Virus record (IMG/VR): IMGVR_UViG_3300046513_000221
Location: 1-64,000 of that record
Reading direction: 5' to 3' (one strand)
Length of the DNA stretch: 64,000 bases
Part shown: one piece after another, positions 40,338 through 63,788 of the stretch
How positions within the stretch are numbered: the first letter of the stretch is position 1
Layout: each line of letters begins with the position of its first letter
Made by a program: the position numbers and the translations under genes
Notes under the pieces: model-generated
Told to the model about the DNA's origin: nothing
The model's input: only the letters and a program-made list of their open reading frames with translations
Database searches by the model: none

Positions 40338-40349
40338 TAAAGTACTGTT
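40338..40349 (-). promoter_or_regulatory. putative late promoter AACA-N6-TA
   Basis: AACAgtacttTA upstream of beta-prime. Confidence 0.7.
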
Positions 40350-40406
40350 ACTCTTTAAACTAAAGGAGTTTTGTCGGTAATTACCTGAAAGCACCAGCTG
40401 TGCGCA

Positions 40407-40418
40407 AACAGTTGGTTA
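40407..40418 (+). promoter_or_regulatory. putative late promoter AACA-N6-TA
   Basis: AACAgttggtTA upstream of 40448. Confidence 0.7.
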
Positions 40419-40447
40419 GATCCCACTAACCAACCGAGTCAATCCAC

Positions 40448-40879
40448 ATGGACTTCATTTTCGAACTCATCAAGTTAGTCTTCACGATGGTGCAATTCAC
40501 AAACATCGTCCTGTCCTGCATCTTGATCTTCTCCGGAATCGCGCTGTTCCGGTACATCAAGCAGGCACTTCGAGGATTCGACAGGTGGATTCACCTGATC
40601 GTGGTGCTGCAAGTGGCCGTGTGCCTCCTGCTGCTATCCATCTACGAAGTGAAGAGTGCAGAGACCGTCATAAAGACGGCCTTGTATTCAAGTTTTGCGT
40701 ATCAATTCTCCATCTTCGCGCTGCTGGTCATAAACGCCCTGTTCCAATCCGGCATCTACAAGTTCTTCTCGGAGAAACATTGCGACGTGACGCTCTTGGG
40801 CAACATCCTCAAGATCATCCACAGCCAGAGCAACGTGAGCGTCAAACCTTCGAACGAAGGCGAAGCCTCCGCAACCTAG
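40448..40879 (+). CDS. multi-pass membrane protein (holin candidate), 143 aa
   Basis: Three to four hydrophobic helices; late promoter. Confidence 0.6.
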   Translation: MDFIFELIKLVFTMVQFTNIVLSCILIFSGIALFRYIKQALRGFDRWIHLIVVLQVAVCLLLLSIYEVKSAETVIKTALYSSFAYQFSIFALLVINALFQSGIYKFFSEKHCDVTLLGNILKIIHSQSNVSVKPSNEGEASAT

Positions 40880-40894
40880 GAATACGTTTCTACC

Positions 40895-41422
40895 ATGAGC
40901 AAGCAAGGCTTTATTACTGAAGAAGGGGTGTACTACGAGTCTATGACGCAAATTAACGCATCGGACGCACCTGTCCCTCTTCGCCCGAGTGAAGACGATG
41001 TCTTCACGAACGGAACATGGATCTCGAACCGCCGCGCCAGCCGCCAGCAGCAGTTCGACTTCCAGACCCAGCCTACGGTTCGGGAGATCCCGCAACCAGC
41101 TTCTCAGGATAGCTCGTCGCGTGATATAAACACTTACAGGATCGGCGAGGACACGCAGTTCAAGTTCAAGCTGAAGGACATCGTCATCGTGGTGGCATTC
41201 ATCGTCTCGATCGCAATTAGCTGGAATAACTCCGACACGCGCATGACGCGTACCGAGGAGAAGCTCTCCCAGCTCAAGAGCGATCTGGTTCAGCTCAAGA
41301 GCGATCTGAGTGAATCGATGAAAAAGAACGATGAACTCTGGCGTCGCCAAGAGGACATGAACCGTACCCTGTCGCAGCAGATCTTCAACGAGTTCCGCGA
41401 TCGCACAGGACAACACAAGTAA
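40895..41422 (+). CDS. single-TM coiled-coil protein (lysis accessory candidate), 175 aa
   Basis: Central TM IVIVVAFIVSIAISW and C-terminal heptad repeats. Confidence 0.6.
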   Translation: MSKQGFITEEGVYYESMTQINASDAPVPLRPSEDDVFTNGTWISNRRASRQQQFDFQTQPTVREIPQPASQDSSSRDINTYRIGEDTQFKFKLKDIVIVVAFIVSIAISWNNSDTRMTRTEEKLSQLKSDLVQLKSDLSESMKKNDELWRRQEDMNRTLSQQIFNEFRDRTGQHK

Positions 41423-41468
41423 AAAAAAAGACACCCATAGCCCCGGAAAGGGCTATGGGTTCTTTTTA
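41422..41468. terminator. bidirectional terminator
   Basis: A-tract, ACCCATAGCCC-cggaaa-GGGCTATGGGT, T-tract, between convergent genes. Confidence 0.8.
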
Positions 41469-42230
41469 ATGATCCCAGGCCAAGTACTGGCCGTCATCGA
41501 GAACGTGCTCGTTCTCGGGATCGTACAGGCGATGGGTGTTGGGGTTCACGCGCAGCTCGGTGTCATACCAGAAGATGCCTACCTGATGCTCGCGCTTCAG
41601 ATCCAACTCCATAGGAATGTCCACGTTGTGGCGCAGACGCGGCAGGAAGAACTCCTTGCCGTGCGAGTCGGTGTTCTCGATGACATCGACGATGTTGTAC
41701 GTTGCGTCATCGGCGAACGAGGTGTAAATGACATCATGCTCCTTCATGGCCTCGGATTTCTTCTGCTTGCCCTCGGTCAGGATGAAGCGCACCTTGACAC
41801 CGGCGCTCTTGAACGGTTCCATGATGCGGTCGAGCATCCGGATCTTGCTCGCCGTGACCGGGTAGGACACATCCACGCAGCTCGTGATGACGGTGATGCT
41901 GTTCAGCACGTCATGCTGGAGCATCTGGCGCAGCAGATGGTAGTACGCCGACGTCTGCAGGTTGTCGTAGAAATTCGGATCGTAGAAAAATTTGTTCAGC
42001 ATCAGCTTGCCCAGTTCAGGATACTTCTTCTCGAAGTCCTCTTCAAAGTGGGTAAGGATTGGGTACTGGAGGCGGTTAGCCGGGTTCGAGTTGATTGCCG
42101 AACTGAACTGCGTCTCGGACAATGCACCACGAAGCTTCGTGTCGTTAAGGATAACCTTCACCCATGGAGTGCTGCAGTCAACCAGCACATCGTCCATATC
42201 GGTGGCTATGTCGAATTTCTTATTCGTCAT
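41466..42230 (-). CDS. HAD-superfamily 5'(3')-deoxyribonucleotidase-like phosphatase, 254 aa
   Basis: Motif I TDMDDVLVD, motif II VITS, motif IV FADD. Confidence 0.75.
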   Translation of the reverse strand: MTNKKFDIATDMDDVLVDCSTPWVKVILNDTKLRGALSETQFSSAINSNPANRLQYPILTHFEEDFEKKYPELGKLMLNKFFYDPNFYDNLQTSAYYHLLRQMLQHDVLNSITVITSCVDVSYPVTASKIRMLDRIMEPFKSAGVKVRFILTEGKQKKSEAMKEHDVIYTSFADDATYNIVDVIENTDSHGKEFFLPRLRHNVDIPMELDLKREHQVGIFWYDTELRVNPNTHRLYDPENEHVLDDGQYLAWDH

Positions 42231-42301: not shown

Positions 42302-43048
42302 TTACTCCTGGAACTCGTCGGACAGGTTGGTCTTCTTGGCACCGGCCTTGCCGCTCGGCTTGCCGGACGACTCTTCGCCGCCTTCTTCGCTATCTTCTTC
42401 GATGGCGCGACGGGCAGGCTTCTTGCCAGCGGACTGGTAGCTACTACCGCCGCCACCATTGCGCTTGGCACCGTGTGCCGAAACGCCGAATGCGTTGTCG
42501 ATCACTGCGTTGAAGAACTCGACCAGCAGCAGCATGTCGATTTCCTGCGTGTCTTCGATCACATCGTTGTCGGCGGTCTTGAACTCGGAGGTGGCGCGCT
42601 GCATGATGTGGAACATCTTCTGCTCGCCGTCGTCCTTGGTCTGGGTCAGCTTCAGGACGAACTCGCCGAAGAAGTTGCCGCCCAGCTTGATCGCGTTCGG
42701 CTTGAAGATCGTGAAGGTACGCGGCGACTTCTCGTTGCCGAACTTCATGGTGAAGCTCTTCAGCGCGCCGTCTTCGTCGGCCAGCAGATCCTGCACGCCC
42801 TTGCGGCCCAGCAGGGCAGCTTGCGCGTCGATCATGAAGTTCATCTTCTCGTCGTAGTCGTAGACGTTGTCGCCCTTCTTCGGTTCCTTGTTCAGGAACT
42901 CGTCGAAGATCGGTGCCAGCGAGATCAGCGAGCCGCCGTTGACCAGCGTGAAGTTCATTGCCGAGAATTGGCGCTCGTAGGAGTTCACGTCACTCTTCGA
43001 GTAGACGGATTGGCGGCGTTGGTTTGGTTGTTGACGGTCGTCGGACAT
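42302..43048 (-). CDS. putative single-stranded DNA-binding protein, 248 aa
   Basis: Beta-rich core, Gly/Ser linker and acidic C-terminal tail ending LSDEFQE. Start moved to MSDDRQQ. Confidence 0.4.
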   Translation of the reverse strand: MSDDRQQPNQRRQSVYSKSDVNSYERQFSAMNFTLVNGGSLISLAPIFDEFLNKEPKKGDNVYDYDEKMNFMIDAQAALLGRKGVQDLLADEDGALKSFTMKFGNEKSPRTFTIFKPNAIKLGGNFFGEFVLKLTQTKDDGEQKMFHIMQRATSEFKTADNDVIEDTQEIDMLLLVEFFNAVIDNAFGVSAHGAKRNGGGGSSYQSAGKKPARRAIEEDSEEGGEESSGKPSGKAGAKKTNLSDEFQE

Positions 43049-43117: not shown

Positions 43118-43867
43118 CTACTTACCTGTTCGATTGTGTAAATCGTGCAGGTGGAATTTGTAGATGAAGTCGTACTCGCTATTTCCGTAGCTGACGTACA
43201 GACGATTCATGCCGACGTGGAGCTGCATGTACTCCTCCGTTTCGGTCTTTTTGTTCTTCAATTTCTCGAAGTTGTGCAGACAGATGAGCGTCTTGTTCTC
43301 CAGCGAGAGGCCGAGCTTGGTCTCATGCAGGTGGATGTCACCGTCGATGATCTCCATGAAGACGAACAGGTTCTGGACCAGTTGCTTCTTCAGGTCGACG
43401 ATCTCGATGATGTCGTTCATGACGATATCACCTTCCTTGACGATGTCGCCATCGTAGTACAGGTTCGCTTTCTTGCAGTCCAGTTCTTTCAACGAGCTGG
43501 TGGGCTCGTCGGACAGGAGGCTCATGTCGATCTTCCCGGTGAACTTTACCGGGAACTCCTCACCGTTGCAGGTGAACCCGCGTTCGTTGAGGTACATGTC
43601 TGGCACGTACTTCTTGTTATCGGCACCGATGAGCTGCTTCTTGTGCAAGCTCAAGAAGGTGTACAGTTTCTTACCGTCTTCGATGAAGATGTACCGTGGC
43701 ATCTCATCTTCGACCTCGATCTTGAAGCTGTCGCAGCTGATCAAGATATCGGACTGACCATCGTTCGAGATGATGGTCTGCTCGACTAGGTCGAAATAGT
43801 ACGGGTTGTTCTTTACATACTGATTTACCTCGTAAAGCTTTTTCGAGTCGATTAGGATTGGTTTCAT
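43118..43867 (-). CDS. hypothetical protein, 249 aa
   Basis: Biased ORF; late promoter motif upstream. Confidence 0.7.
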   Translation of the reverse strand: MKPILIDSKKLYEVNQYVKNNPYYFDLVEQTIISNDGQSDILISCDSFKIEVEDEMPRYIFIEDGKKLYTFLSLHKKQLIGADNKKYVPDMYLNERGFTCNGEEFPVKFTGKIDMSLLSDEPTSSLKELDCKKANLYYDGDIVKEGDIVMNDIIEIVDLKKQLVQNLFVFMEIIDGDIHLHETKLGLSLENKTLICLHNFEKLKNKKTETEEYMQLHVGMNRLYVSYGNSEYDFIYKFHLHDLHNRTGK

Positions 43868-43885: not shown

Positions 43886-43897
43886 TAATAGATTGTT
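43886..43897 (-). promoter_or_regulatory. putative late promoter AACA-N6-TA
   Basis: AACAatctatTA. Confidence 0.65.
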
Positions 43898-43919
43898 GGA
43901 TCGTCTCACTCACACCAAA

Positions 43920-43928
43920 ATAATATAT
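43920..43928 (-). promoter_or_regulatory. putative early promoter ATATATTAT
   Basis: Motif copy tandem to a late promoter. Confidence 0.55.
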
Positions 43929-45849: not shown

Positions 45850-47535
45850 CTATGCCAGCAGCGCCTCCAGATCGACGATGACGTCGTTGACGTCAGGCAG
45901 ACCGAGGAGTTCCTTGCCGATTCGGATGATATCGTTCTCGGCGATGAGGCCGGGGATGATATCGTCGAGTTCCGGACGCTTGTCGCACATGATCTTGCCG
46001 ATCATGGTGTCCGCATCGATGTTACCTGCCAGAATGATCGATGGATACATGGACGATAAGTCCTCGTCCACAATATTCTCGAAGATGCGATTGGAGCGCT
46101 TGCCATCCTTGCTGATGACGATGCCGACGGCGTCCATCATCTCAGGCAGAGCCACGAATGCACCCTTGAACTTCTTCTTCTCTTCCTCTTCCTTCAGACG
46201 GTTGTGGTTGTTGGACAGGAGGAAACCCTCCTTCTCCAGAACCATCGCCGCGAAGTTACGGATCGAGGTGGTCTTGGTCATGACCTTGTTGAAGCGGGTC
46301 GCGGTCATCAGGCCCATGTTGTACAGCAGGTCGATGTCGTTGTTCTGCTCTTCGAGCTGATACAGACGGAACGAGTCATACATCGAGTACTTGAGGAAGC
46401 TCTCGTAGTTGATGTACATCGCGTCCGTGATCTCGCCCTCGTACTCATACTTACCTTCGATCCCCTCGTCGATCAGGATCGCATCCAGAGCGTACGATTC
46501 GCGCTTGCCCATCGTCGCCCGGATCTTGGCGAACTGCTCCTGCATCTCGACGAACTGCGAGTAACCTGCAACCTCCAGCTTGGTGTTCCGCTTGGTGAAG
46601 TCGGTTGCGAAGGAATCGTTCTCGATCCATGTGGACTTGTACGGCAGCTCCTTTGGACACATCACCTCTTCAGGCTTTAGCTTCAGTCGGAGCATACGGT
46701 TCTTCATGGTTACCAAGTCGAACCCGGCGTTCCAAGCACCCATGAAGTCGGGTTTGTCACGCTTCACGATCTTGAAGAAGTCCTTCAGCAGCTCCGCCTC
46801 ATCGTCGTAGATGTGTACCTCGATCGCACGCACCTTGGCGTAATCGATCTTGGAGTTTGGATCCTTCTCGTTCATCTCGTCGATGACCTGAGAGATCCAC
46901 TCATCGCCGTATTCTGCGAATGCTTCAAGGAAGTCCATCTGAGATTGGTTGTTCTCGTTCTTCAGGATGAACGAGTGGATGGTCATCGTCGGCTGGTGGA
47001 TGTACGAGATCATCGACACCGGACATGGAGCCAGCTCTGGTTCAGGAAACTCCCTGTACTCCGACACATCGACCTCAATATCGTAGAACGCCTTGGTGAT
47101 CGGCAGGACTGCGATCTGGTGACGGTTGCGGTCGAGCCACTCACGCGTCTTGTAGTCTGCCAGATCCATGTCCGTCAGGTGCAGGTTGTTGTCCTTGTGG
47201 AGGTTACGGAGTTCCTTCCACTTACCGTTGTTCTTACAAGCCTTGTAGAAGTCCATCTGGTCGGAGGCCTTAGCCATCTCATACTGCAGATTGTCGAACT
47301 TCACGGTTATCGGCTCGACCTTGTCGAACTCGATGTAATTCGCTGCCTTCTTCAGCCTGAACTCGTCCTTGGTAATGTAGAACGTGTAGGACGGATCCTC
47401 CTCGATCTCGAATTGCTTCTTGATCGTACCATCCGGTTGAAGTACGCTCTCCACATAGATGATCTTGGAGTGCTGGCGATTGTTGTCGTCACGATCGCGA
47501 ACGTGCAAGACGTTCGATAGCTGTTTTCCGCTCAT
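45850..47535 (-). CDS. polB: family B DNA polymerase, N-terminal subunit (3'-5' exonuclease plus palm motif A), 561 aa
   Basis: ExoI FYDIEVD, ExoII WNAGFD, ExoIII YSMYD, motif A DEDLSSMYPS. Lacks motifs B and C. Confidence 0.9.
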   Translation of the reverse strand: MSGKQLSNVLHVRDRDDNNRQHSKIIYVESVLQPDGTIKKQFEIEEDPSYTFYITKDEFRLKKAANYIEFDKVEPITVKFDNLQYEMAKASDQMDFYKACKNNGKWKELRNLHKDNNLHLTDMDLADYKTREWLDRNRHQIAVLPITKAFYDIEVDVSEYREFPEPELAPCPVSMISYIHQPTMTIHSFILKNENNQSQMDFLEAFAEYGDEWISQVIDEMNEKDPNSKIDYAKVRAIEVHIYDDEAELLKDFFKIVKRDKPDFMGAWNAGFDLVTMKNRMLRLKLKPEEVMCPKELPYKSTWIENDSFATDFTKRNTKLEVAGYSQFVEMQEQFAKIRATMGKRESYALDAILIDEGIEGKYEYEGEITDAMYINYESFLKYSMYDSFRLYQLEEQNNDIDLLYNMGLMTATRFNKVMTKTTSIRNFAAMVLEKEGFLLSNNHNRLKEEEEKKKFKGAFVALPEMMDAVGIVISKDGKRSNRIFENIVDEDLSSMYPSIILAGNIDADTMIGKIMCDKRPELDDIIPGLIAENDIIRIGKELLGLPDVNDVIVDLEALLA

Positions 47536-47717
47536 TGGTTTCCTATAAGTACATTTTAATCATTACTCTTATCACTAAAAACATGTACCGCTTCCGGAGC
47601 GGTCCCGTTTTTTTATTTATTATTTATAATTATTTAAATTCGCGACACGTACGCGCGCGCGAGAAAGTCATTCGAGCTCCACCAGCTGACCGGAAGTCCA
47701 CTGAAAATGTGATGCTT

Positions 47718-47729
47718 AACAACCCAATA
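47718..47729 (+). promoter_or_regulatory. putative late promoter AACA-N6-TA
   Basis: AACAacccaaTA upstream of 47777. Confidence 0.7.
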
Positions 47730-47735
47730 ATATAT
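47727..47735 (-). promoter_or_regulatory. putative early promoter ATATATTAT for the PolB N-subunit
   Basis: Motif copy overlapping the late promoter on the other strand. Confidence 0.6.
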
Positions 47736-47776
47736 ACTCGAAACACCGGTAAGAAAACGGTGCATCTGGAGCAATC

Positions 47777-48625: not shown

Positions 48626-48627
48626 CG

Positions 48628-49176: not shown

Positions 49177-49186
49177 GGGATAGGAC

Positions 49187-49840: not shown

Positions 49841-49892
49841 GTTCTTCGGCGGCGGTCTCCAAAAAATGCTACCGCCGAACTAAATTGACCCT

Positions 49893-49904
49893 AACATTCA
49901 GATA
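49893..49904 (+). promoter_or_regulatory. putative late promoter AACA-N6-TA
   Basis: AACAttcagaTA upstream of the capsid gene. Confidence 0.75.
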
Positions 49905-49979
49905 GAATGCAGCCTTCAGAGGGCTGTGTAAGTTGATTTAGGATAACCTAAACCTCTTTTACTTTTAAGGAAGAATCAC

Positions 49980-53088: not shown

Positions 53089-53100
53089 TAATTAGATGTT
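53089..53100 (-). promoter_or_regulatory. putative late promoter AACA-N6-TA
   Basis: AACAtctaatTA. Confidence 0.7.
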
Positions 53101-53147
53101 AGGCTTGCGAAAAAATAAAATAGCCAATCACAAGAACGGATACGTGT

Positions 53148-55747: not shown

Positions 55748-55759
55748 AACATAAGAATA
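55748..55759 (+). promoter_or_regulatory. putative late promoter AACA-N6-TA
   Basis: AACAtaagaaTA heading the portal operon. Confidence 0.7.
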
Positions 55760-56294: not shown

Positions 56295-57338
56295 ATGTCC
56301 GCAGAATTACTCATCACCCAGAACGAACTCGATCAGTACCTCGCCGGTCTCGATCTGAGTACGGCCCTGAACAACCGCGTCTTCAACGCCATCCAGCTCC
56401 TAACGGCGTCGCTGTACAACGATACACTGTACTACCTTGTCATCGGCAAGCTGACGCCGGAGCGTCTGGACACGATCCCGATCAACAATGCTTCCATCAA
56501 GGTATTGCTGGACAGCCTGTCCGGTGCCGACGAGAGCGTCCTCGCACGCAAGCGTGTGTACGAGAAGTTCCATGATGATCTGCCGCTGTATCGCGGATTC
56601 ATCAAGAAAATGAATCAGACCTCGCCGCAGTTCTTCTTCCGTATGCAGCAGCCCAACACGAACTTCATCACGGAGCTGACCCTCGACAAGACGGGTCTTG
56701 ACCCGACGAAGTTTACCGGTCTCTTCGAGACCAAGACCAAGTACAACCAGATCATCGCCCAGACTCGCCTGAGTGCCGAGTACGTGGAGCTGGCCGCTTA
56801 CGCCCAGACCCACAGCTTCTCCCGGCTCCTGACCTTGATCGAGAACGAGCTGAACGCCTTCCGGCTGATTACCGTCGTGAACACCTCTGTTCAGAGTCAG
56901 ATTCCCGCTGACACCAGTCTGCTCGGGTACATCCTGCGCGGCGTGTTCACGGATCCTTTCCGCGTCGGTTTCATCGACAACATCAACTACGCGCTGATGC
57001 GCATGGTGGACAAGTACGATCAGGACACGTCGAAGACGGGGGTTGTCGGTATCAAGAACGCATGGTTGACGGACACTTGGGAGAATGTGTTCCTCTCACA
57101 AACCAGTGCCGAATTCATTGAGAAATTGGGTCGTACGTCGTACATCCGCTACGTACTTCCCAATGTCTACGGAACGGTCTACTTCACCCCCGACGAGATC
57201 GCGGCCGAATCCGCTGCGCACAGTACGATCATTTCCGGCGTGGAGACATCCAGTGGCGTGATGGATTTGGCTTACAAGTACCTGATAAAGGTGGTGATCC
57301 AGATCCGCCTCAACATGACACCGCTGTCGGTCATCTAA
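56295..57338 (+). CDS. late hypothetical (probable virion) protein, 347 aa
   Basis: Abuts the upstream stop; late operon. Confidence 0.7.
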   Translation: MSAELLITQNELDQYLAGLDLSTALNNRVFNAIQLLTASLYNDTLYYLVIGKLTPERLDTIPINNASIKVLLDSLSGADESVLARKRVYEKFHDDLPLYRGFIKKMNQTSPQFFFRMQQPNTNFITELTLDKTGLDPTKFTGLFETKTKYNQIIAQTRLSAEYVELAAYAQTHSFSRLLTLIENELNAFRLITVVNTSVQSQIPADTSLLGYILRGVFTDPFRVGFIDNINYALMRMVDKYDQDTSKTGVVGIKNAWLTDTWENVFLSQTSAEFIEKLGRTSYIRYVLPNVYGTVYFTPDEIAAESAAHSTIISGVETSSGVMDLAYKYLIKVVIQIRLNMTPLSVI

Positions 57339-57348: not shown

Positions 57349-58410
57349 ATGACTTTAACCAAAGAGCAACTGCGGGCTTTCGTGGACGATCAGATCAACT
57401 CCCGGAACTTCCTGCTGTTCGCTAAGCTGCTCAACATCGGCAACCAGACGAACTTCCAGCGCGTAGTGGAGCTGCTGTACAACAACCAGATCAACTACTT
57501 CATGCTGAATGATCTGAGGATCATCGACGACCAGAGCATCTCGAACTTCCTCGCTCAGTACGATCTGAACGCCAACCCGACCATCCTGTTCGCCGCCGGG
57601 AACGGCGTCTTCATCGCGGAGCGGTGGCTTTCGGGACGGTTCGACGGCAAGGCCTTCGACTACATCAACGATGTCATCACCGCATTCAACTCCGGTGCGA
57701 ACGACAACTACCTCAACGATCGCAAGTACGTCCAGATCAAGCGTCCGGCTGTGCTGGTCGGGGATAAGGACTTCCGCTCTTACAGTTCCGATGTGGAGCT
57801 GCGAAACTCGTTCCATGAGAAGGTGGTCCTCCCACTGCTGGCGAAGTACGGCGTGACTGACATCCGCCAGCTGTTCCCCCTCAGCGCGGCTTATCCGGTC
57901 ACATCGCCGTTCCCGACCTCGATTCAGGGCAAGTACGAGTCGATCTTCGGCAGTATCCTGCCCTACCTGAACAACGCCGACCTCATCCGCGTCTTCCTGA
58001 CGGTGAACGACGATAGCTCGATGCTCGACCGCTTCCTCGTCGAGATGACTGAGATCAGTAACTTCCAGACCGTCAGCGAATCGACCATGAGCACCCACAG
58101 GTTCCACCTGTTTGAGCTCTCCGCGATCCAGCGTCCCTACAACGACGTGGAGACTAGCCTTCAGGAGCGGAACCTGCACGAGTTCCGTTTTCCTGTGGCT
58201 AAACTCTCGGAGAACTTCTCGCAAATGATGTACAGTGCAGAGTTGGTGCGACTGGCGAAGGCATACGGCGGTGACGCCGAGTACTTCAATAGCTACATCG
58301 CAGATCTGAAGGGGTTGGCTGCAACTATCATGAAATTCAATGAGTTTGCGAAGGATGTGTACGCTAACATCTTAAATAGTATTAAACTAATCAACTCGAA
58401 CGGAAATTAG
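57349..58410 (+). CDS. late hypothetical (probable virion) protein, 353 aa
   Basis: AAGGAG RBS; directly upstream of portal. Confidence 0.7.
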   Translation: MTLTKEQLRAFVDDQINSRNFLLFAKLLNIGNQTNFQRVVELLYNNQINYFMLNDLRIIDDQSISNFLAQYDLNANPTILFAAGNGVFIAERWLSGRFDGKAFDYINDVITAFNSGANDNYLNDRKYVQIKRPAVLVGDKDFRSYSSDVELRNSFHEKVVLPLLAKYGVTDIRQLFPLSAAYPVTSPFPTSIQGKYESIFGSILPYLNNADLIRVFLTVNDDSSMLDRFLVEMTEISNFQTVSESTMSTHRFHLFELSAIQRPYNDVETSLQERNLHEFRFPVAKLSENFSQMMYSAELVRLAKAYGGDAEYFNSYIADLKGLAATIMKFNEFAKDVYANILNSIKLINSNGN

Positions 58411-58415: not shown

Positions 58416-60878
58416 ATGAAAAAGAATTCGGACCAAAAACTGAAGGTCAGCGCAAGCGCCGTCAAGGCCTTGGAGTCGCTCTCGAAGAGCAACAACAAGC
58501 TTTTGACCGCGCAGGACGGTATCCCTGATATCATGCTCAACGCCGGTTCCAAGACCGAGCGGCTGGGCAAGAACCTCAACTCCGTCATCGCCAGAGCCTA
58601 TAACAACTTCGTGGGACTGGGACAGGACGTCAACGCCCATGAGGTGAACCAACTGCTGGCGCTCTCGAAACGTAAGGGCGACAAGCGTTCCACCAACGTG
58701 AAGAAGCAGCTGGAGGATTTCAAGAAATCCGTCGGCACCAACGACCAAGCCGCGATGCTCGTGCAGCAACGCAAGACCTACAAGGCTAGTCTCTACAGCT
58801 CTTACGACCTCATCCTCAACATCATCCCCAAGATGAAGCTGGCAGTCAACACGATCGCCAACAGCATCATCTCTCCGGACGACTTCAGCAAGCACAGCTT
58901 CGCCTCGATGTTCAACGAGACCCGGATGAGCAAGGAGAACATCGATGTGACCAAGGAGCGGGTCAAGGATCTGCTCAAGAAGCACAAGATCGAGGACGAG
59001 CTGAAGGCCGATGTGGTTGACGCACTCGTCAAGGGCGAGAAGTTCTTCGCCGTCCTTTCCATGAACGACGAGATCAAGTCGCTCCTGAAGGAGAATGCCG
59101 ACACCGAGAAGGATGGTGGCTACGAGACCCTCAAGGGTTCCTGCGGCTCCATGCTCAACGAGGCGGCAATGCATCGCGACGAGGGCTACATGGTCGAGGA
59201 AGGCCTCGCCCTCTTCAGCGAGAGCAAGGACGAGAAAGATCAGACCAAGGTCGCCGAGAAGCGCAAGAAGTTCGTGGACGACCTCGACGAGTTCCTGCAC
59301 GAGAACCTGATCATCGGCGACAGCAAGAACTTCCTCGCAGAGCATCTGGAGCAGGAAACCGAACTCAACGAGAGCGCGATCTTCCAGCGCTACAGCCAGA
59401 ACGCAAATGACACGCCAGAGAAGACGGATACTACTTCCGGCCTCGACGGTCTGCGTCTCAGCACCGACAGCGCAGTGCTGAAGCGTCTGGATGCCGACAA
59501 CGTGGTCAAACTGGAGTACGATGGTCGTACCTACGGCTATATCTACCTCGATGTGGTCAAGTCAGACAAGAACGACAAGACCACCAAGCCGGGTGCCGCA
59601 AGCAGCTCCGGTGGCATGATGGCGGGTAACTCCAACAGCGTGACCTCGTCGATTCAGGGTGTCCTGTACTCGGCCAACGATGTCGATCGCGGCATCAACA
59701 ATACCGGTCAAAAATCCGGTCAGGTTCTGAACGATCCGAAGCTGGCGTTCATCGCCGATGCCTTCGTGAATCGTCTGAGCCAGAAGGAAAACATCCGTCT
59801 GATCCGGAAGAACGAGCAGCTGAAATACATGATCTACCATTCGCTGATCACGAAGCGGATCACGAAGGACGAGAAGATGCGCATCATCTTCTTCTCGGCG
59901 AATGAAGTCGTTCACATCGACCGCAAAGAATCGATCTTCGACAACATTCTCTTCTTCGCGAAGATGTACATCGCGACCCTGATCACCATTCTGATGCAGA
60001 ACATCGTACGCGGCGCAGACAAGCGCGCCTACTACATCGACATCGGCTTGGAGAACGACGCCGCCAACGCGGTGAACGACGTGATCCGGAGCGTGAAGGC
60101 CAAGGACATCGCTAACCTCCACAACATGGACATCGGTTCCGTGCTGAACGTCCTCGGCGAGTTCAACGACTACTACATGCCGACCATCGACGGCGAGAAG
60201 CCTATCACGATGGAGACGATCGAGGGTCTGAGCAACGTATCGCTCGACAACGATTTCCTCAACTGGCTGTCCAACAATATCTTCTCCGGTATCGGTCTGC
60301 CATCGGCGTACCTGACCGAAGTCGAGAACGTGGACTTCGCCAAGACGCTGGGTATGCAGTCGGCACGCTTCATCCGCGACATCATCGCGGAGCAGATCAT
60401 CTTCGGCAAGGGCTACTCCGAGTTGCTGCAGAAGCTGTACCTGATCGAGCACGGCGACCCTCGCAAGAAGGCCGCTGCTGCCAAGTCGGACGGCTCGACC
60501 CCGGAAGATGGAAAGAAGAGCAAGGAGAAAGACGACGATGTGCTGTTGGACATTGAGTCCCTCTGCGTCAAGTTCCCCTCCCCGGTCAGTCTCAACATGA
60601 CCAACCTGAACGACCAGCTGAACAACCTCAACATGCTCGTCGAGACCCTCGGCGACATCATCGATGTACCGGAGGCCGACAAGGCCATCGGTCAGACCGC
60701 ATTCAAGCGAGAAATGTACAAGAAATTCTTGTCCAACCTCGACTGGGAAGCGGTGGAGGAGATCATGAAGAAGGTCCAGCAGGAGGTGATCAAATCTAAG
60801 CTGAATCCGGCTAATGCCCCGGCAGATGCAGCTCCACCTGCGGGAGCGGACGACGGCAGCGAAGACGACGCACCATAA
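58416..60878 (+). CDS. portal protein (T4 gp20-like), 820 aa
   Basis: RGADKRAYYIDIG, NDYYMPTIDGEKPITMETIEG and NIFSGIGLPSAYL parallel the gp20 motifs RAPERRVFYIDVG, EDYWLP...TLPG and L.VP.SR. Confidence 0.85.
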   Translation: MKKNSDQKLKVSASAVKALESLSKSNNKLLTAQDGIPDIMLNAGSKTERLGKNLNSVIARAYNNFVGLGQDVNAHEVNQLLALSKRKGDKRSTNVKKQLEDFKKSVGTNDQAAMLVQQRKTYKASLYSSYDLILNIIPKMKLAVNTIANSIISPDDFSKHSFASMFNETRMSKENIDVTKERVKDLLKKHKIEDELKADVVDALVKGEKFFAVLSMNDEIKSLLKENADTEKDGGYETLKGSCGSMLNEAAMHRDEGYMVEEGLALFSESKDEKDQTKVAEKRKKFVDDLDEFLHENLIIGDSKNFLAEHLEQETELNESAIFQRYSQNANDTPEKTDTTSGLDGLRLSTDSAVLKRLDADNVVKLEYDGRTYGYIYLDVVKSDKNDKTTKPGAASSSGGMMAGNSNSVTSSIQGVLYSANDVDRGINNTGQKSGQVLNDPKLAFIADAFVNRLSQKENIRLIRKNEQLKYMIYHSLITKRITKDEKMRIIFFSANEVVHIDRKESIFDNILFFAKMYIATLITILMQNIVRGADKRAYYIDIGLENDAANAVNDVIRSVKAKDIANLHNMDIGSVLNVLGEFNDYYMPTIDGEKPITMETIEGLSNVSLDNDFLNWLSNNIFSGIGLPSAYLTEVENVDFAKTLGMQSARFIRDIIAEQIIFGKGYSELLQKLYLIEHGDPRKKAAAAKSDGSTPEDGKKSKEKDDDVLLDIESLCVKFPSPVSLNMTNLNDQLNNLNMLVETLGDIIDVPEADKAIGQTAFKREMYKKFLSNLDWEAVEEIMKKVQQEVIKSKLNPANAPADAAPPAGADDGSEDDAP

Positions 60879-60889: not shown

Positions 60890-61046
60890 AACCCCCATAG
60901 ACCGATTAAGGTCTATGGGGATTCTTACACAAGCTTACGTCCATCGTCAGCATTTTTAGCGCGGAGGCTACAGGTCGATGCGCAAGGCTTCCTCTAAGGA
61001 GCAACAGGTTGGGCGCAGACGCTGCGAGTCCACCGCGACAGGGACT
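60890..61046 (-). ncRNA. candidate ~150-nt late small RNA
   Basis: Perfect late promoter (61046-61057) followed by no ORF with an RBS, ending at a hairpin; the 5' and 3' ends can pair. Confidence 0.45.
60891..60921. terminator. bidirectional terminator-like hairpin
   Basis: CCCCATAGACC-gattaa-GGTCTATGGGG. Confidence 0.75.
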
Positions 61047-61057
61047 ATAGGTATGTT
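61046..61057 (-). promoter_or_regulatory. putative late promoter AACA-N6-TA
   Basis: AACAtacctaTA downstream of the tail-tube terminator. Confidence 0.6.
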
Positions 61058-61069
61058 AGGAACTGAAAC

Positions 61070-61106
61070 TGAAGAGCCAATAGACCCCGGAGGATCTATT
61101 GGCTTT
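61070..61106 (-). terminator. terminator of the sheath-tube operon
   Basis: AGCCAATAGACC / GGATCTATTGGCT hairpin. Confidence 0.65.
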
Positions 61107-61114
61107 CAGTCCGA

Positions 61115-61897
61115 TTAGGCCGAAGGGACCGAGGTTGCTACCTCGCTCATGTTCAGGTAATCGTTCTCGTTGTAGAACTTGTAGGTGGACGACTGCGACA
61201 TCTGGGAAGCTGCGAATTTCTCCACAGCGCCGCCGATGTTCATGTAACCCTTGAAGTCCTGTGTCGGCTCGGCGAACTCATGCGAACCCGATTCGAAGTT
61301 GAAGTGGTCCAGGATGATCTTCGTCGGCATGACGTTGGTGTACAGCGCAGCGAACTCGATGTTCGAGCCGTCCGGGCCGTTGCCGAAGTTGTCGGCGTCG
61401 GGACGCGTGACAACGTACAGCAGAATGCCGGTGTGGTTCGACGAGTGGTACGCCAGACCCGATTTCTTCGGATAGGTAGCGATACCCGTCTTCGGATCAC
61501 GGATGCCGGAAACCCACTCGTTGTAGTACTTGGTCTCAGGCGAGCCGGACTTTTCCTGATACTTCAGGGAGAAGCCTTCGGCCTTCTGGACGGTACCCTT
61601 CGCGTGCGAGGTCTCGTTGTTGGTGAAGCCCGACGTGATAGCGCCGGTATCCATCGTCATGTCGCTCAGGCCCGACAGAGCCTTGAAGTTGCGCTCGGAC
61701 AGCTGCTTGAACTCGCGGCCCTCGTCGGTGCCGATCCATTTAGGGACTTTGATCCACTTGATGAATGCGTAACCGGAGACGTACGGGTCTTTGGTGTTTT
61801 CGCCGGTGGCGACGTAGCCGTTGAAGAACGACGCCAGACCGGGATCGACCTTGTGGCTGGTGAGCGAGGTGTCGCGCACCATGTTATCGTTTGCCAT
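61115..61897 (-). CDS. tail tube protein, 260 aa
   Basis: Directly downstream of the sheath gene; DPYVSGYAFIKW, EKSGSP..YYNEW..GIRDP.TG, IE.AALYTNVMP pattern. Confidence 0.7.
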   Translation of the reverse strand: MANDNMVRDTSLTSHKVDPGLASFFNGYVATGENTKDPYVSGYAFIKWIKVPKWIGTDEGREFKQLSERNFKALSGLSDMTMDTGAITSGFTNNETSHAKGTVQKAEGFSLKYQEKSGSPETKYYNEWVSGIRDPKTGIATYPKKSGLAYHSSNHTGILLYVVTRPDADNFGNGPDGSNIEFAALYTNVMPTKIILDHFNFESGSHEFAEPTQDFKGYMNIGGAVEKFAASQMSQSSTYKFYNENDYLNMSEVATSVPSA

Positions 61898-61917
61898 TTC
61901 GATGACCTTTCTGCTGA

Positions 61918-63705
61918 TTAGCGGTTGATGATGAAGTCGGCGAAGATCCGCTCGATCAGACCGTTGAAGGTCAGCTCAACCTGCACACGCACGATCTTTT
62001 GCTGCTTATCGTAGTCGGATGCGTAAACGGTCGCCTTGATGGTCGAGCAAGCACGGTTGCTCACCCACTTCTTCAGGTAACTGTTCAGGTTGTAGGACAT
62101 CGCCTCGTGGGTGATGTCATCGTTGAACTCGTCGCGGTATTCGTCGACGAGTTGCTCGACGTCACGCTTGATACGGAACAGCGCACGAACGTTGTTCAGG
62201 TTCGACAGGGCCGAGTTGACGGTCTGCGAGGTCAGCTGGGTACCGAGATTGACGCGTTTAGGGTCTTTCTCGATGTAGTTGATCTGCTTCTTGTACAGGG
62301 TCTCTTTCCATGCCTCGTTCGGGAAGAAGTTGATGGCTTCGTAGCCCGAGATCACGCCGCGACGTGGACCTGCGAAGGACCAGTGTACGCCGAACTTGTC
62401 GTCGTGCGGGGCGATCTTCTTCGCGAGGAAGTAAGGCGTGGTGACCTTGACGTTCTGGCCGGTGTACTCGTCGTAGACCACGAAGTCCTGTGCGAAGATC
62501 GCGGTGGCGAACGAGGACATACCGATCGAGTTGGTGCGGAAGTCCACGGTCTGCTGCTCATTGGCTTGGAAGCCGCAGTCCAGCAGTGCCACGCAGTCGC
62601 CACGGATGTCCGTAGCCATCTGCGACATGGCGTTCTTCACGGCGGCGCTGTTGTTGCCGTCCAGCATCAGGTCGAACAGGTATTGCTTCTTGTCGGTCGC
62701 GTTGGAGTCCAGCTGGCCGGTGTAGGCTTTGATCAGCAGGGAGTCTTCCGAGTTGCCACCGGTCCAGGTACCTTCCGAGCCGCCCGAGATGTGATTCACG
62801 GTCTTCAGGTCAGCGGCGGTGTCGTCGGTGACTTGGTTATCGGCCAGACCAGCGGTCAGCGGAGTCGCGAACTTGACAGCTTGGTGGATACCTTGTGCGA
62901 CGGACACGCCGTTACGCTCGGCACCGAAGAAGATGTCCAGATGCAGCGGGTTCACAGTATCCGTAGGATTGATGAACTCGCGGATGGTATCGATCAGATC
63001 CTTGCGGTCGAGGACGCGGAAGGTAGTCGAGTACTTGTTGACCACGTTGGCCCAGTACATGGATTCGCGGTTGCGGTCCTTGGCGGTAGGCTCGAACGAA
63101 ACGGTGTATGGACCATCGATGATGGTGTCCACGCCGACCGTGTTCTTCGCGGCGATCTCGAAGGTGTACGTACGGAAGTCGTAGGTACCGTCCAGCGAGT
63201 CCAGCAGCGAGATGCGGAAGCCCAGATCTTCGTAGGCTTTGCCGCGACCGACAGGCATCAGGACGCCCAGCGGGTAGGACACGAAGGTGGCATCGGTCAC
63301 CGGGTCAGCGCCCAGCAGGGTCTGCATCGCGGCGACGGAGGTCGCGCCCGGTACAGTCGTCAGCGTTGGCTTGACGATGTTGGTCAGGCCATCCTGACCG
63401 CAAGCGACGCTCAGCATCGCGTTGGCGTACAGGCCGTCTTCCGGCAGAATGCGGATGAAGTAGGCTTCGCCGCCAGCTTTCAGATGCTCGAACACGTTGT
63501 AGAGCGTCTGGCCGGTTTCCGACATATCGGGTTCACCGAAGTAGAACTTCGCCTCGCCGACGGAGGTCAGGCGCACCAGTTTGTTGTCTGGGCCTTTGGT
63601 TGCTTTACCGCATGCAAACAGGACGGTCGAGCCCTCAGCCGTCTGGAAGACGAAGGAGTTGTCGATGATCCTGGAATGCACTGAAGGGTGGAGATATTCA
63701 GGCAT
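61918..63705 (-). CDS. contractile tail sheath protein, 595 aa
   Basis: MPEYLHPSV..., FAGPRRGVI, LYKKQINYI and LNNVRAL..IKR sheath C-terminal motifs. Confidence 0.9.
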   Translation of the reverse strand: MPEYLHPSVHSRIIDNSFVFQTAEGSTVLFACGKATKGPDNKLVRLTSVGEAKFYFGEPDMSETGQTLYNVFEHLKAGGEAYFIRILPEDGLYANAMLSVACGQDGLTNIVKPTLTTVPGATSVAAMQTLLGADPVTDATFVSYPLGVLMPVGRGKAYEDLGFRISLLDSLDGTYDFRTYTFEIAAKNTVGVDTIIDGPYTVSFEPTAKDRNRESMYWANVVNKYSTTFRVLDRKDLIDTIREFINPTDTVNPLHLDIFFGAERNGVSVAQGIHQAVKFATPLTAGLADNQVTDDTAADLKTVNHISGGSEGTWTGGNSEDSLLIKAYTGQLDSNATDKKQYLFDLMLDGNNSAAVKNAMSQMATDIRGDCVALLDCGFQANEQQTVDFRTNSIGMSSFATAIFAQDFVVYDEYTGQNVKVTTPYFLAKKIAPHDDKFGVHWSFAGPRRGVISGYEAINFFPNEAWKETLYKKQINYIEKDPKRVNLGTQLTSQTVNSALSNLNNVRALFRIKRDVEQLVDEYRDEFNDDITHEAMSYNLNSYLKKWVSNRACSTIKATVYASDYDKQQKIVRVQVELTFNGLIERIFADFIINR

Positions 63706-63776
63706 GTTTCTTTCCTTAGAGAAAGTGGTTATTGACTTCCAAAAGTCGGTGTTACGATAAACTTTGGAATGCGATC

Positions 63777-63788
63777 TAATCTACTGTT
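63777..63788 (-). promoter_or_regulatory. putative late promoter AACA-N6-TA
   Basis: AACAgtagatTA upstream of the sheath gene. Confidence 0.75.

What the first reader, a model, noticed from the sequence alone, without database searches (positions are those of the whole stretch)
40338..63788. AR9-type late promoters (AACA-N6-TA) in a GC-rich phage: uracil DNA or a thymine-reading variant?
Seen: nine exact intergenic copies (40338-, 40407+, 43886-, 47718+, 49893+, 53089-, 55748+, 61046-, 63777-) upstream of capsid, portal operon, sheath, endolysin operon and others. Established: the AR9 non-virion RNAP recognises this consensus and needs deoxyuridine in the template strand opposite the AA; AR9 and phiR1-37 have U-DNA and low GC. 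Inference: either this is a GC-rich U-DNA (or modified-T) phage, which is unexpected because unrepaired C deamination should lower GC, or its specificity subunit has evolved to read T.
Basis: partly seen in the sequence, partly recalled or inferred. Interest (0 to 1): 0.8.

Follow-up and report, generated by a model that had tools for sequence, protein, structure and literature searches.

The report
Late promoters of GC-rich uracil-DNA phage
The repeated AACA-N6-TA signal is real and is almost certainly the late-gene promoter of a giant soil phage related to AR9 and phiR1-37, and the rest of its genome carries the enzymes and the polymerase residue that go with uracil in place of thymine, so it is most likely a GC-rich member of a known kind of uracil-DNA phage.

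Summary
Observation confirmed. All nine sites exist at the stated coordinates. Nine of the 18 core matches lie in the 8.5% of the window that is intergenic (2.35 expected; 1 of 2000 shuffles reaches nine). Eight point at a gene 19-78 nt downstream; the ninth (61046-) precedes a structured non-coding stretch of about 155 nt.

The window is bases 1-64000 of a 263-kb rhizosphere contig, a jumbo phage whose nearest isolate is phiR1-37 (about 46% aa identity). Eleven more correctly oriented sites occur elsewhere on the contig, and the motif precedes the capsid gene in 38 of 39 relatives.

On uracil versus thymine, the evidence favours uracil:
- The sigma-like specificity subunit keeps the valine (AR9 V206) that excludes thymine's methyl group. 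This valine is invariant in the 19-member clade shared with phiR1-37 but varies elsewhere in the family.
- The phiR1-37 dU gene block is conserved: HAM1-type dTTP pyrophosphatase, RNAP subunit, dCTP-deaminase-type enzyme.
- A homolog of the AR9 5'(3')-deoxyribonucleotidase-family gene lies in the window.
- No thymidylate synthase or dUTPase appears in the 61% of the contig surveyed.

No start-site or DNA-chemistry data exist. Verdict: a new, GC-rich member of a known kind.

The parts
40338..40349 (-). Late promoter AACAGTACTTTA. Predicted TSS is A at 40338, with a 30-nt leader to the virion-RNAP beta'N gene (38740-40308).
   Evidence: The gene is homologous to the AR9 virion RNAP beta'N piece and to phiR1-37 g178.
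40407..40418 (+). Late promoter AACAGTTGGTTA, divergent from the previous one. Predicted TSS 40418, with a 30-nt leader to 40448-40879 and 40895-41422 (holin-like).
43886..43897 (-). Late promoter AACAATCTATTA. Predicted TSS 43886, with a 19-nt leader to the operon 43118-43867 / 42302-43048 (phiR1-37 g176-like) / 41466-42230 (Dtm-like). An early-type element ATATATTAT lies 23 nt upstream at 43920-43928.
47718..47729 (+). Late promoter AACAACCCAATA. Predicted TSS 47729, with a 48-nt leader to 47777-48625, the GH108 endolysin (48628-49176) and 49187-49840. It overlaps the early element ATATATTAT (47727-47735) on the minus strand, which faces the DNA-polymerase exonuclease-part operon.
49893..49904 (+). 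Late promoter AACATTCAGATA of the major capsid gene (49980-51563). Predicted TSS 49904, with a 76-nt leader that begins with a conserved hairpin (49907-49929).
   Evidence: There is an island of conservation, with compensatory changes in the hairpin, in two relatives whose capsid proteins are about 75% identical. The motif lies upstream of the capsid gene in 38 of 39 relatives.
53089..53100 (-). Late promoter AACATCTAATTA. Predicted TSS 53089. It drives the small virion protein gene 52595-53011 (AR9 gp152-like).
   Evidence: Highest flank-PWM score.
55748..55759 (+). Late promoter AACATAAGAATA. Predicted TSS 55759, with a 23-nt leader to the operon 55782-56294 / 56295-57338 / 57349-58410 / 58416-60878 (virion structural, possibly portal).
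61046..61057 (-). Late-promoter-type site AACATACCTATA with no ORF downstream.
60890..61046 (-). Candidate small RNA of about 155 nt, lying between the 61046(-) site and a 14-bp hairpin plus T run (60925-60893).
   Evidence: RNA fold -61.8 kcal/mol, z = -3.9, 0 of 200 shuffles as stable. No Rfam family matches.
63777..63788 (-). Late promoter AACAGTAGATTA. Predicted TSS 63777, with a 72-nt leader to the tail sheath (61918-63705) and tail tube (61115-61897).
35428..36873 (-). Non-virion RNAP betaN subunit (AR9 'gp105', phiR1-37 g194). It forms half of the -10 base pocket.
   Evidence: 38% identity to AR9 (E 5e-85) and 44% to phiR1-37. AR9 R363 is kept. K375 is R, as in phiR1-37.
38740..40308 (-). 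Virion RNAP beta'N subunit, a late gene that reads the early promoters in the next infection.
41466..42230 (-). HAD-family phosphatase, homologous to phiR1-37 g177 and to the AR9 gene annotated 5'(3')-deoxyribonucleotidase. Candidate dTMP phosphatase.
   Evidence: tblastn E 5e-15 and 2.4e-13. It sits in synteny next to the virion RNAP beta'N gene. HAD motifs I-IV are intact. The AF2 model matches human deoxyribonucleotidases at ranks 2, 3, 4, 7 and 8.
20304..20312 (-). Example of the AR9-type early promoter element ATATATTAT. Other exact copies are at 4452, 24389, 30953, 43920 and 47727, all on the minus strand. One-mismatch forms are at 323, 16390 and 38710 (minus) and 53148 (plus).
   Evidence: Six exact TATATTAT against 0.15 expected. 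The AR9 annotated early promoters share AAATATATATTAT.

Best explanation
The nine sites are late promoters read by the phage's own non-virion, multisubunit RNA polymerase, as in phage AR9.

Mechanism, by analogy with AR9: the gp226-type sigma-like subunit and the betaN subunit bind the template strand opposite AACA (positions -11 to -8), and transcription starts at the A of the TA.

The phage is an uncultured 263-kb rhizosphere jumbo phage of the phiR1-37 clade with 55% GC. Its DNA most likely carries deoxyuridine in place of thymidine, so the element actually read is 3'-UUGU-5'.

Shown here:
- the statistics, orientation and conservation of the motif;
- the presence and residue conservation of the polymerase subunits;
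- the conserved dU-pathway genes.

Inferred:
- that transcription starts at these sites;
- that the template strand is what is read;
- that the DNA contains uracil.

My confidence is about 0.85 that these are non-virion RNAP late promoters and about 0.7 that the DNA is dU-substituted.
For: Promoter identity:
- Intergenic enrichment is 9 against 2.35 expected, with 1 of 2000 shuffles reaching 9. The exact N6 spacing and TA end are specific.
- Eight of the nine sites face a gene 19-78 nt away.
- The downstream genes are capsid, sheath and tube, endolysin, virion proteins and the virion RNAP beta'N piece.
- Eleven further sites lie on other parts of the same contig, all oriented toward the next gene 23-127 nt away (tail-fibre, virion-RNAP beta-like, head-tail-joining and HU genes and several unannotated ORFs). 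Early-type ATATAT(T/A/G)AT elements instead precede the sigma-like subunit, RecA-like and HAM1 genes.
- The extended consensus from 20 sites carries information beyond the core.
- The motif lies upstream of the capsid gene in 38 of 39 relatives, including 6 of 7 GC-rich ones. In close relatives it is an island of conservation followed by a hairpin kept by compensatory changes.
- The consensus equals the published AR9 one, template 3'-UUGU-N6-AU(+1) (PMC9209446).

Polymerase:
- betaN is in the window.
- The sigma-like subunit, betaC and a beta'C piece are on the same contig.
- The sigma-like subunit matches chain A of 7S01 at E 1.6e-33.

Uracil:
- In AR9, V206 sterically excludes the thymine methyl at -10, and V206G accepts T.
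- Here the helix reads YSDRVMWEY, so V206 is V and Y210 is Y. betaN R363 is kept, and K375 is R as in phiR1-37.
- In an exhaustive family search the position is V in only 86 of 146 members and changes at least 9 times on the tree. It is invariant in the 19-member clade (SH-aLRT 100) that holds this phage and phiR1-37.
- The phiR1-37 block g100 (HAM1 Dtt), g101, g102 (RNAP) and g103 (Dcd) (enzymology in PMC12697855) is conserved in order on this contig at about 78-84 kb.
- The HAM1-like protein has 343 aa and 26% identity to Dtt (E 2e-11). The deaminase has 34% identity to Dcd (E 4e-23), with HAE and PCxxC kept.
- A homolog of the AR9 5'(3')-deoxyribonucleotidase-family gene with intact catalytic motifs lies in the window.
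- No thymidylate synthase or dUTPase family appears in about 160 of the 263 kb surveyed, including beside the ribonucleotide reductase genes.
Against: - There are no transcript 5' ends. The only RNA-type run holds three short contigs inside late genes of a relative about 95% identical, and DNA carry-over in that library cannot be excluded.
- There is no chemistry on the DNA.
- About 39% of the contig (about 111.7-203.9 kb and 252.6-263.4 kb) was not surveyed, so a thymidylate synthase could still be there.
- Cytidylate deaminases and HAM1 or HAD enzymes also occur in thymine phages. Their substrate specificity here is assumed from orthology at 26-34% identity.
- I207 is M here, as in 28 of 146 family members, and betaN K375 is R, so the pocket geometry is not proven identical.
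- No Ugi homolog was found in the window.
- GC3 of about 0.8 shows no net C-to-U drift.
- dU-DNA can fail standard library preparation (PMC8323127), yet this phage assembles at 11-35x word depth. AR9-like and phiR1-37-like contigs are also common in the same collections.
- The 61046(-) site has no gene downstream, and 47718(+) overlaps an early element.
Confidence: 0.65

Rival explanations
1. The promoters and polymerase are the same, but the genome contains thymine (or a C5-modified thymine). The specificity subunit reads T despite the valine, for instance because M207 or other changes reshape the pocket. The deaminase, HAM1 and HAD enzymes would then serve ordinary nucleotide-pool functions.
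For: - The GC content of 55% and GC3 of about 0.8 are unlike every proven dU jumbo phage.
- I207 is M and betaN K375 is R.
- The phage is readily recovered in standard metagenome libraries, whereas dU-DNA failed Nextera preparation in PMC8323127.
- 39% of the contig is unsurveyed.
- Deaminases occur in T-phages too.
Against: - The valine is invariant in the clade shared with proven dU phage phiR1-37 but is freely replaced elsewhere in the family.
- M at position 207 and R at betaN 375 also occur in the phiR1-37 lineage itself.
- The complete phiR1-37 Dtt-RNAP-Dcd block is syntenic, and a dTTP pyrophosphatase ortholog is hard to reconcile with a thymine genome.
- No thymidylate synthase or dUTPase appears in 61% of the contig, including next to the ribonucleotide reductase genes.
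- In AR9, exclusion of T at -11 comes from DNA-backbone packing rather than a side chain, so a T-reader would need more than one substitution.
Confidence: 0.15
2. The motif is a chance or compositional by-product of AT-rich spacers, or a signal of another kind such as a processing site or a regulator binding site, and not a promoter.
For: - The window-wide count is only marginally above chance.
- The spacers are AT-rich.
- One site has no gene downstream and one overlaps another element.
- No start-site data exist.
Against: - Dinucleotide-preserving shuffles of the spacers themselves give 2.35 against the 9 observed.
- The N5, N7 and TT variants are not enriched.
- Orientation and distance to start codons are consistent.
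- The sites are absent from early-region spacers, which carry a different conserved element instead.
- The motif is conserved across GC 0.24-0.61 relatives and matches an experimentally defined promoter of a related enzyme.
Confidence: 0.05
3. The sites are used by the host RNA polymerase or by the phage's virion RNAP, not by the non-virion RNAP.
For: The phage also encodes a virion RNAP. No experiment assigns an enzyme to a site.
Against: - Sigma-70-like sites are not enriched: 6 found against 9.0 +/- 3.3 in shuffles.
- The element that matches AR9's early (virion-RNAP) promoters is a different sequence and sits in front of early genes, including the sigma-like subunit gene.
- The AACA-N6-TA class precedes the virion-RNAP genes themselves, as expected for late genes.
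Confidence: 0.03

Closest known systems
Late promoters of Bacillus phage AR9/PBS1 read by the five-subunit non-virion RNAP with gp226 (PMC5449584, PMC9209446)
   Same: - Identical core AACA-N6-T-A(+1).
- Location in front of virion and late genes, including the virion-RNAP genes.
- The phage encodes homologs of betaN, betaC, a beta'C piece and the gp226 sigma-like subunit, with V206, W208, Y210 and S245 and betaN R363 kept.
- A second, AR9-like early promoter class (ATATATTAT) is present.
   Different: - The proteins share only 25-38% identity.
- The genome is 55% GC against 27-29%.
- TA is strict at -1/+1 here, where AR9 has TW.
- There are extra preferences at -13, -12, -2, +2 and +3.
- I207 is M and betaN K375 is R.
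- No Ugi homolog was seen in the window.
- The host is a presumed Gram-negative rhizosphere bacterium, judged from the GH108 endolysin and the phiR1-37 clade.
Yersinia phage phiR1-37 (dU-DNA; Dcd g103 and Dtt g100; PMC12697855)
   Same: - It is the nearest isolate: capsid 46%, virion RNAP beta'N 45%, betaN 44% identity.
- The sigma-like subunits fall in the same clade with an invariant valine.
- The gene order HAM1, g101, RNAP, deaminase is the same, as is g176, g177, virion RNAP beta'N.
- The motif lies 71 nt upstream of its capsid gene.
   Different: - GC is 32-34% against 55%.
- The enzymes share only 26-34% identity.
- Large blocks are rearranged; for example, the capsid gene sits between the two DNA-polymerase pieces here.
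- dU in phiR1-37 is proven chemically, whereas here it is inferred.
Roseophage DSS3_VP1 ('Naomiviridae'; PMC8323127)
   Same: dU-for-dT substitution outside the AT-rich Firmicute and Yersinia jumbo phages, with a Dcd plus a dT-nucleotide hydrolase.
   Different: - It is an unrelated phage of 70-75 kb.
- Its dTMP phosphatase is of the HD type.
- No AR9-type polymerase or promoters have been reported for it.
- I did not verify its GC content.
phiKZ-type non-virion RNAP and its late promoters (PMC8287921, PMC7618050)
   Same: Split beta and beta' subunits plus a fifth subunit, with late transcription independent of the host.
   Different: - phiKZ DNA has thymine (stated in PMC9209446).
- Its late promoter consensus is different (from my own knowledge, not checked here).
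- This phage groups with AR9 and phiR1-37, not with phiKZ.

Membership tests
AR9-type non-virion-RNAP late promoter | Non-template consensus AACA at -11 to -8, a six-base spacer, then T(-1) and A/W(+1). | tested here: met
   Nine exact intergenic sites in the window and 11 more on the contig. N5, N7 and TT variants are not enriched.
AR9-type non-virion-RNAP late promoter | Placed upstream of, and oriented toward, late genes (virion, lysis and virion-RNAP genes), and absent from early genes. | tested here: met
   Eight of nine window sites and 11 of 11 other sites face a gene 19-127 nt away. No site lies in the 1-40 kb early spacers, which carry ATATATTAT instead. The exception is 61046(-), which precedes a non-coding RNA candidate.
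AR9-type non-virion-RNAP late promoter | The phage encodes the non-virion RNAP core pieces and the gp226-type specificity subunit. | tested here: met
   betaN is at window 35428-36873. The sigma-like subunit is at L020:9890-11374 on the same contig and matches 7S01_A at E 1.6e-33. betaC (688 aa) and a beta'C piece (602 aa) are also on the contig. A 452-aa ORF (cut by the locus end) with only a faint Rpb1_1 hit may be the fifth piece, beta'N, but it could not be told from a virion-RNAP piece.
AR9-type non-virion-RNAP late promoter | Transcription starts at the A of the TA. | tested here: inconclusive
   Read laying on 47600-53200 gave no molecule ends. The RNA-type run holds only three short contigs inside late genes. 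Indirect support: a conserved hairpin begins 3 nt after the predicted capsid start site.
AR9-type non-virion-RNAP late promoter | Recognition of the template strand, with a requirement for deoxyuridine at -11 and -10. | not testable with these tools
   Only proxies are available. V206 is kept and is invariant in the clade, Y210 and betaN R363 are kept, I207 is M and K375 is R.
dU-DNA phage, phiR1-37 type | dCTP deaminase (Dcd) of the cytidylate-deaminase family. | tested here: met
   A 189-aa protein with PF00383 and 34% identity to phiR1-37 Dcd (E 4e-23), with HAE and PCxxC kept. It lies just downstream of the RNAP piece (one small 97-aa ORF between), where phiR1-37 Dcd directly follows it. 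Its substrate (dCTP versus dCMP) was not tested.
dU-DNA phage, phiR1-37 type | An enzyme that removes thymidine nucleotides (Dtt of the HAM1 family, or Dtm). | tested here: met
   A 343-aa HAM1-like protein (PF01725) has 26% identity over 293 aa to Dtt (E 2e-11) in the same position. In addition, a HAD protein of the AR9 5'(3')-deoxyribonucleotidase family lies at window 41466-42230. Specificity was not tested.
dU-DNA phage, phiR1-37 type | No phage thymidylate synthase or dUTPase. | tested here: inconclusive
   None found in contig 1-111.7 kb or 203.9-252.6 kb (about 61%), using precomputed Pfam and my own scans. The rest was not examined.
dU-DNA phage, phiR1-37 type | dU replaces dT in virion DNA. 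| not testable with these tools
   Sequence data read U as T. There is no isolate and no chemistry.
dU-DNA phage, PBS1/AR9 type | Uracil-DNA glycosylase inhibitor Ugi. | tested here: not met
   tblastn with AR9 Ugi finds nothing in the window. The rest of the contig was not searched. Ugi is small and fast-evolving, so this says little.

The most novel reading that the evidence does not exclude
The phage has thymine (or only partly substituted) DNA, and its non-virion RNAP reads T at -11 and -10 even though the 'uracil-specific' valine is retained. Uracil specificity would then depend on more than V206, and the AR9-type template-strand promoter logic would also work on ordinary DNA in GC-rich hosts.
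Probability: 0.12. Interest if true: 0.75.

Novelty: new member of a known kind. Interest (0 to 1): 0.5.

Why it matters
If the inference holds, uracil-DNA jumbo phages are not confined to AT-rich genomes. One lineage lives in the rhizosphere at 55% GC with GC3 of about 0.8, and relatives reach 66% GC. Replacing T by U would therefore not force a genome toward AT.

This phage would also be a natural test of how strongly unrepaired cytosine deamination shapes composition.

It extends the only known template-strand, base-modification-dependent promoter system to Gram-negative soil phages. It also gives a clean, information-rich promoter set in a GC-rich background, where the AACA-N6-TA signal stands out far better than in AR9.

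The family-wide survey shows natural G, A and S replacements of the key valine in other lineages. These are candidates for natural thymine-reading versions of the enzyme.

Tried and rejected
- Megablast of 11 kb against phage records found no match.
- The word-indexed protein search with AR9 gp226 reached only close Bacillus-phage relatives. With phiR1-37 g245 it gave 20 relatives but not this phage's copy.
- Two candidate contigs, for P0026 and P0024, proved to be other phages with GC 0.29 and 0.41.
- The copy was finally found by a pattern scan plus an exact 40-mer that tied the window to IMGVR_UViG_3300046513_000221. That scan's pattern required V or I at the key position. Conservation among those IMG/VR loci is therefore partly by construction, so I discounted it and replaced it with the exhaustive search.
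- tblastn with AR9 Ugi, Dcd, Dtm, kinases and the sigma-like subunit against the window found nothing except betaN.
- Pfam scans of most larger window ORFs found no deaminase, HAM1, thymidylate synthase or dUTPase.
- Pfam and PDB sequence searches could not place the Dtm-like protein. Only the fold search did.
- Three pattern scans (Dtm-like, RNAP g102 full length, RNAP core) missed this contig. The dU block was reached by walking the contig.
- Read laying gave no transcript ends.
- A regex sweep for the ThyX motif RHR..S was uninformative, because it hits off-frame Arg-rich ORFs in GC-rich DNA.
- 37569(-) was rejected as a tenth site.
- Rfam found nothing in the window, and there are no tRNAs.
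- The GC content of DSS3_VP1 could not be read from the paper.

Full report
**Observation**

The pattern AACA-N6-TA occurs 18 times in the window, against 11.0 +/- 3.3 in shuffles. On its own this is weak. The window has 52-60% GC, and its real genes stand out by GC3 of about 0.8, which allowed a gene map.

Dinucleotide-preserving shuffles of the spacers give 2.35 +/- 1.53, and 1 of 2000 reaches nine.
- Variants with 5- or 7-base spacers, or TT in place of TA, occur 1, 0 and 1 times in spacers.
- All nine lie between 40 and 64 kb. Spacers of the 1-40 kb block have none.
- Eight sites face a gene on the same strand, with the predicted start 19-78 nt from the start codon.
- The ninth, 61046(-), follows the tail-tube terminator. 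It is followed by about 155 nt without an ORF that folds well (z = -3.9) and ends in a hairpin plus T run.

**What the window is**

There is no nucleotide match to any phage record. The capsid protein, an RNA polymerase beta' piece, both DNA-polymerase pieces, the sheath and the tube match only the AR9/PBS1, Staphylococcus S6-type, Listeria and phiR1-37 jumbo phages. phiR1-37 is the nearest, at about 46%.

An exact 40-mer places the window on IMGVR_UViG_3300046513_000221, which is the same record as JGI 3300046513 Ga0495616_0000004 (263,413 bp). Window coordinates equal contig coordinates. The DNA runs that hold it are rhizosphere metagenomes.

The RNA polymerase piece behind the 40338(-) site corresponds to the AR9 virion-RNAP beta'N gene. 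The window also holds the non-virion-RNAP betaN subunit at 35428-36873.

**Are the sites promoters?**

The published AR9 late consensus is, on the template strand, 3'-UUGU(-11 to -8)-N6-AU(+1)-5'. This is AACA-N6-TA on the coding strand, with the start at the final A (PMC9209446). Four independent lines support the same function here.

1. The downstream genes are late-type. They are the capsid, sheath and tube, a GH108 endolysin operon, small virion proteins, a large virion protein operon and the virion RNAP.
2. The prediction holds out of sample. On about 50 kb of other parts of the same contig there are 11 further intergenic sites against five in ORFs. All 11 face the next gene 23-127 nt away (tail-fibre, virion-RNAP beta-like, head-tail-joining and HU genes and several unannotated ORFs).
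3. The motif (allowing TW) lies within 250 nt upstream of the capsid gene in 38 of 39 IMG/VR relatives of GC 0.24-0.61. This includes six of seven GC-rich ones, where chance is about 0.1-0.2 per locus. In two relatives with about 75% identical capsids, the upstream region is diverged except for TAACAT..TTAGA and a hairpin directly after it, which is kept by compensatory changes.
4. The 20 sites share preferences outside the core: -13 is never A, -12 is never G, -2 is A or T in 18 of 20, +2 is G or A in 18 of 20, and +3 is never G. A flank-only PWM trained on the 11 outside sites separates the window's intergenic matches from its in-ORF matches (p = 0.001).

Sigma-70-like sites are not enriched.

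**The second promoter class**

The other AR9 promoter class is conserved as well. AR9's annotated early promoters share AAATATATATTAT. The window has six exact TATATTAT against 0.15 expected, all on the minus strand in spacers of the early-gene block, plus one-mismatch forms. Elsewhere on the contig such elements precede the sigma-like subunit, RecA-like and HAM1-like genes.

**Uracil or thymine: the polymerase**

In AR9 the -10 uracil sits in a pocket formed by the gp226 2.1bis helix and betaN.

- The C-beta of V206 lies 3.9 A from C5 of the uracil.
- V206G makes the enzyme accept T.
- I207 and betaN R363 sandwich the base, and K375 hydrogen-bonds to it.
- Exclusion of T at -11 comes from DNA-backbone packing.
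- Y210 stacks on -9G.

This phage's ortholog (L020:9890-11374, 494 aa) lies in the conserved GroEL-x-sigma-like neighbourhood. It aligns to PDB 7S01 chain A at E 1.6e-33 and reads YSDRVMWEY. So V206 is V, I207 is M, W208 is W and Y210 is Y. betaN keeps R363 and has R at K375, the same state as phiR1-37.

The IMG/VR scan that found the gene required V or I at that position. I therefore repeated the survey with an exhaustive search, which gave 264 representatives. Among 146 full-length members the position is V in 86. Otherwise it is I, T, K, A, S, G, P, R and others, with at least nine changes on the tree.

This phage falls in a 19-member clade (SH-aLRT 100) with phiR1-37 in which the valine is invariant. 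Retention is therefore informative.

**Uracil or thymine: the metabolism**

Li et al. 2025 (PMC12697855) showed that phiR1-37 makes dU-DNA with two enzymes. One is a dCTP deaminase (G4KK42). The other is a HAM1-family dTTP pyrophosphatase (G4KK39) in its neighbourhood. PBS1 uses a dCTP deaminase and a dTMP phosphatase that is recognisable only by structure as a 5'(3')-deoxyribonucleotidase.

In phiR1-37 these genes are g103 and g100, flanking an RNA polymerase piece g102. Walking the contig from the window's right end found the same block at about 78-84 kb:

- a 1363-aa divergent gene;
- a 343-aa Ham1p_like protein, with 26% identity over 293 aa to g100 (E 2e-11);
- a 318-aa protein;
- a 602-aa RNAP piece;
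- a 189-aa dCMP_cyt_deam_1 protein, with 34% identity to g103 (E 4e-23) and HAE and PCxxC kept.

Inside the window, 41466-42230(-) is homologous to phiR1-37 g177. That gene is in turn homologous to the AR9 gene annotated 5'(3')-deoxyribonucleotidase. I take this AR9 gene to be the PBS1 Dtm of the paper, but I did not verify the accession.

Synteny (g176-g177-g178) and all four HAD motifs are kept. The AlphaFold model (residues 1-176, pLDDT about 80) matches human cytosolic and mitochondrial deoxyribonucleotidases at ranks 2, 3, 4, 7 and 8.

Gene calls with Pfam, plus my own scans, cover about 61% of the contig. They show no thymidylate synthase or dUTPase, including next to the ribonucleotide reductase genes at about 246-250 kb.

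**Limits**

- No transcript ends could be obtained.
- No chemistry exists.
- 39% of the contig is unsurveyed.
- Enzyme specificities are assumed from distant orthology.
- M207 and R375 differ from AR9, although both also occur in the phiR1-37 lineage.
- GC3 of 0.8 shows that, if the DNA is dU, deamination does not dominate its composition.
- The sigma-like subunit occurs on contigs of GC 0.19-0.66, so composition seems to follow the host rather than the base chemistry.

**Verdict**

The sites are AR9-type late promoters (about 0.85). The phage is most likely a GC-rich dU-DNA member of the phiR1-37 clade (about 0.7). This is a new member of a known kind, with a useful twist for the question of whether uracil genomes must be AT-rich.

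Noticed in passing
window 60890-61046 (-): A late-promoter-type site drives about 155 nt of GC-rich non-coding sequence that ends in a 14-bp hairpin plus T run. This terminator is shared with the convergent virion gene. The RNA fold is -61.8 kcal/mol with z = -3.9, and no Rfam family matches. It is a candidate late small RNA.
   Followed up: partly
window 4452, 20304, 24389, 30953, 43920, 47727 (all -); variants at 323, 16390, 38710 (-) and 53148 (+): AR9-type early promoter element ATATATTAT. There are six exact TATATTAT against 0.15 expected, all in spacers ahead of early-strand genes. On the rest of the contig the element precedes the sigma-like subunit, RecA-like and HAM1-like genes.
   Followed up: partly
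window 47718-47735 and 43886-43928: Late and early elements are combined. At 47718 the late motif on the plus strand is the reverse complement of the flank of an early element on the minus strand, giving overlapping divergent promoters. At 43886 an early element sits 23 nt upstream of the late motif on the same strand, so that operon, which includes the Dtm-like gene, may be expressed both early and late.
   Followed up: no
window 49907-49929; L044 and L045 upstream of the capsid gene: A hairpin beginning 3 nt after the predicted capsid start site is kept in three phages by compensatory changes (GCAGCCTTCAGAGGGCTGT, GCTCCCTTCGGAGGGGAGC, GCATCCTTCGGAAGGATGC). It is probably a 5'-terminal stabilising stem.
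   Followed up: partly
proteins P0131, P0169, P0174, P0176 (G); P0063, P0083, P0093, P0154, P0167 (A); P0017, P0057, P0121, P0177 (S): In other lineages of the sigma-like subunit family, the position of AR9 V206 carries small residues like the engineered T-accepting V206G. These are possible natural thymine-reading enzymes. Their genomes were not examined.
   Followed up: no
window 41466-42230 (-): Public gene calls start this gene at Met12 (243 aa, P0039), which would delete the first catalytic aspartate of the HAD motif. Conservation upstream of Met12 in phiR1-37 and AR9 favours the 254-aa start.
   Followed up: yes
window 34078-37636 (-): A cluster of NUDIX (34078-34578), DUF4326 (34580-34945) and a NADAR-like protein (37139-37636, weak hit to the DarT1-associated NADAR family) flanks the non-virion RNAP betaN gene. 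It may be an ADP-ribose-processing or counter-defence module.
   Followed up: no
window 45850-47535 (-) and 53212-55176 (+): The family-B DNA polymerase is split into an exonuclease-part gene and a polymerase-part gene on opposite strands. They are separated by the endolysin operon, the capsid gene and an HNH homing endonuclease (51671-52555). In phiR1-37 the capsid gene lies elsewhere.
   Followed up: no
window 47609-47644: A 36-bp AT-rich element (TTTTTTATTTATTATTTATAATTATTTAAATTCGCG) next to a bidirectional hairpin recurs on another contig of the same sample. This was seen as loose ends in read laying.
   Followed up: no
contig about 70.4-71.0 kb (L108:12062-12664): A 200-aa guanylate-kinase-like protein, preceded and followed by early-type ATATATGAT elements nearby. 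It is a candidate dNMP kinase; a dUMP kinase activity is known from PBS2 (my own knowledge).
   Followed up: no
window 50057-50392, 50773-50972, 52811-52948: A soil metatranscriptome-type run holds contigs of a relative about 95% identical, only inside the capsid gene and the small virion gene behind the 53089(-) site. This is consistent with high late expression, but DNA carry-over cannot be excluded.
   Followed up: partly
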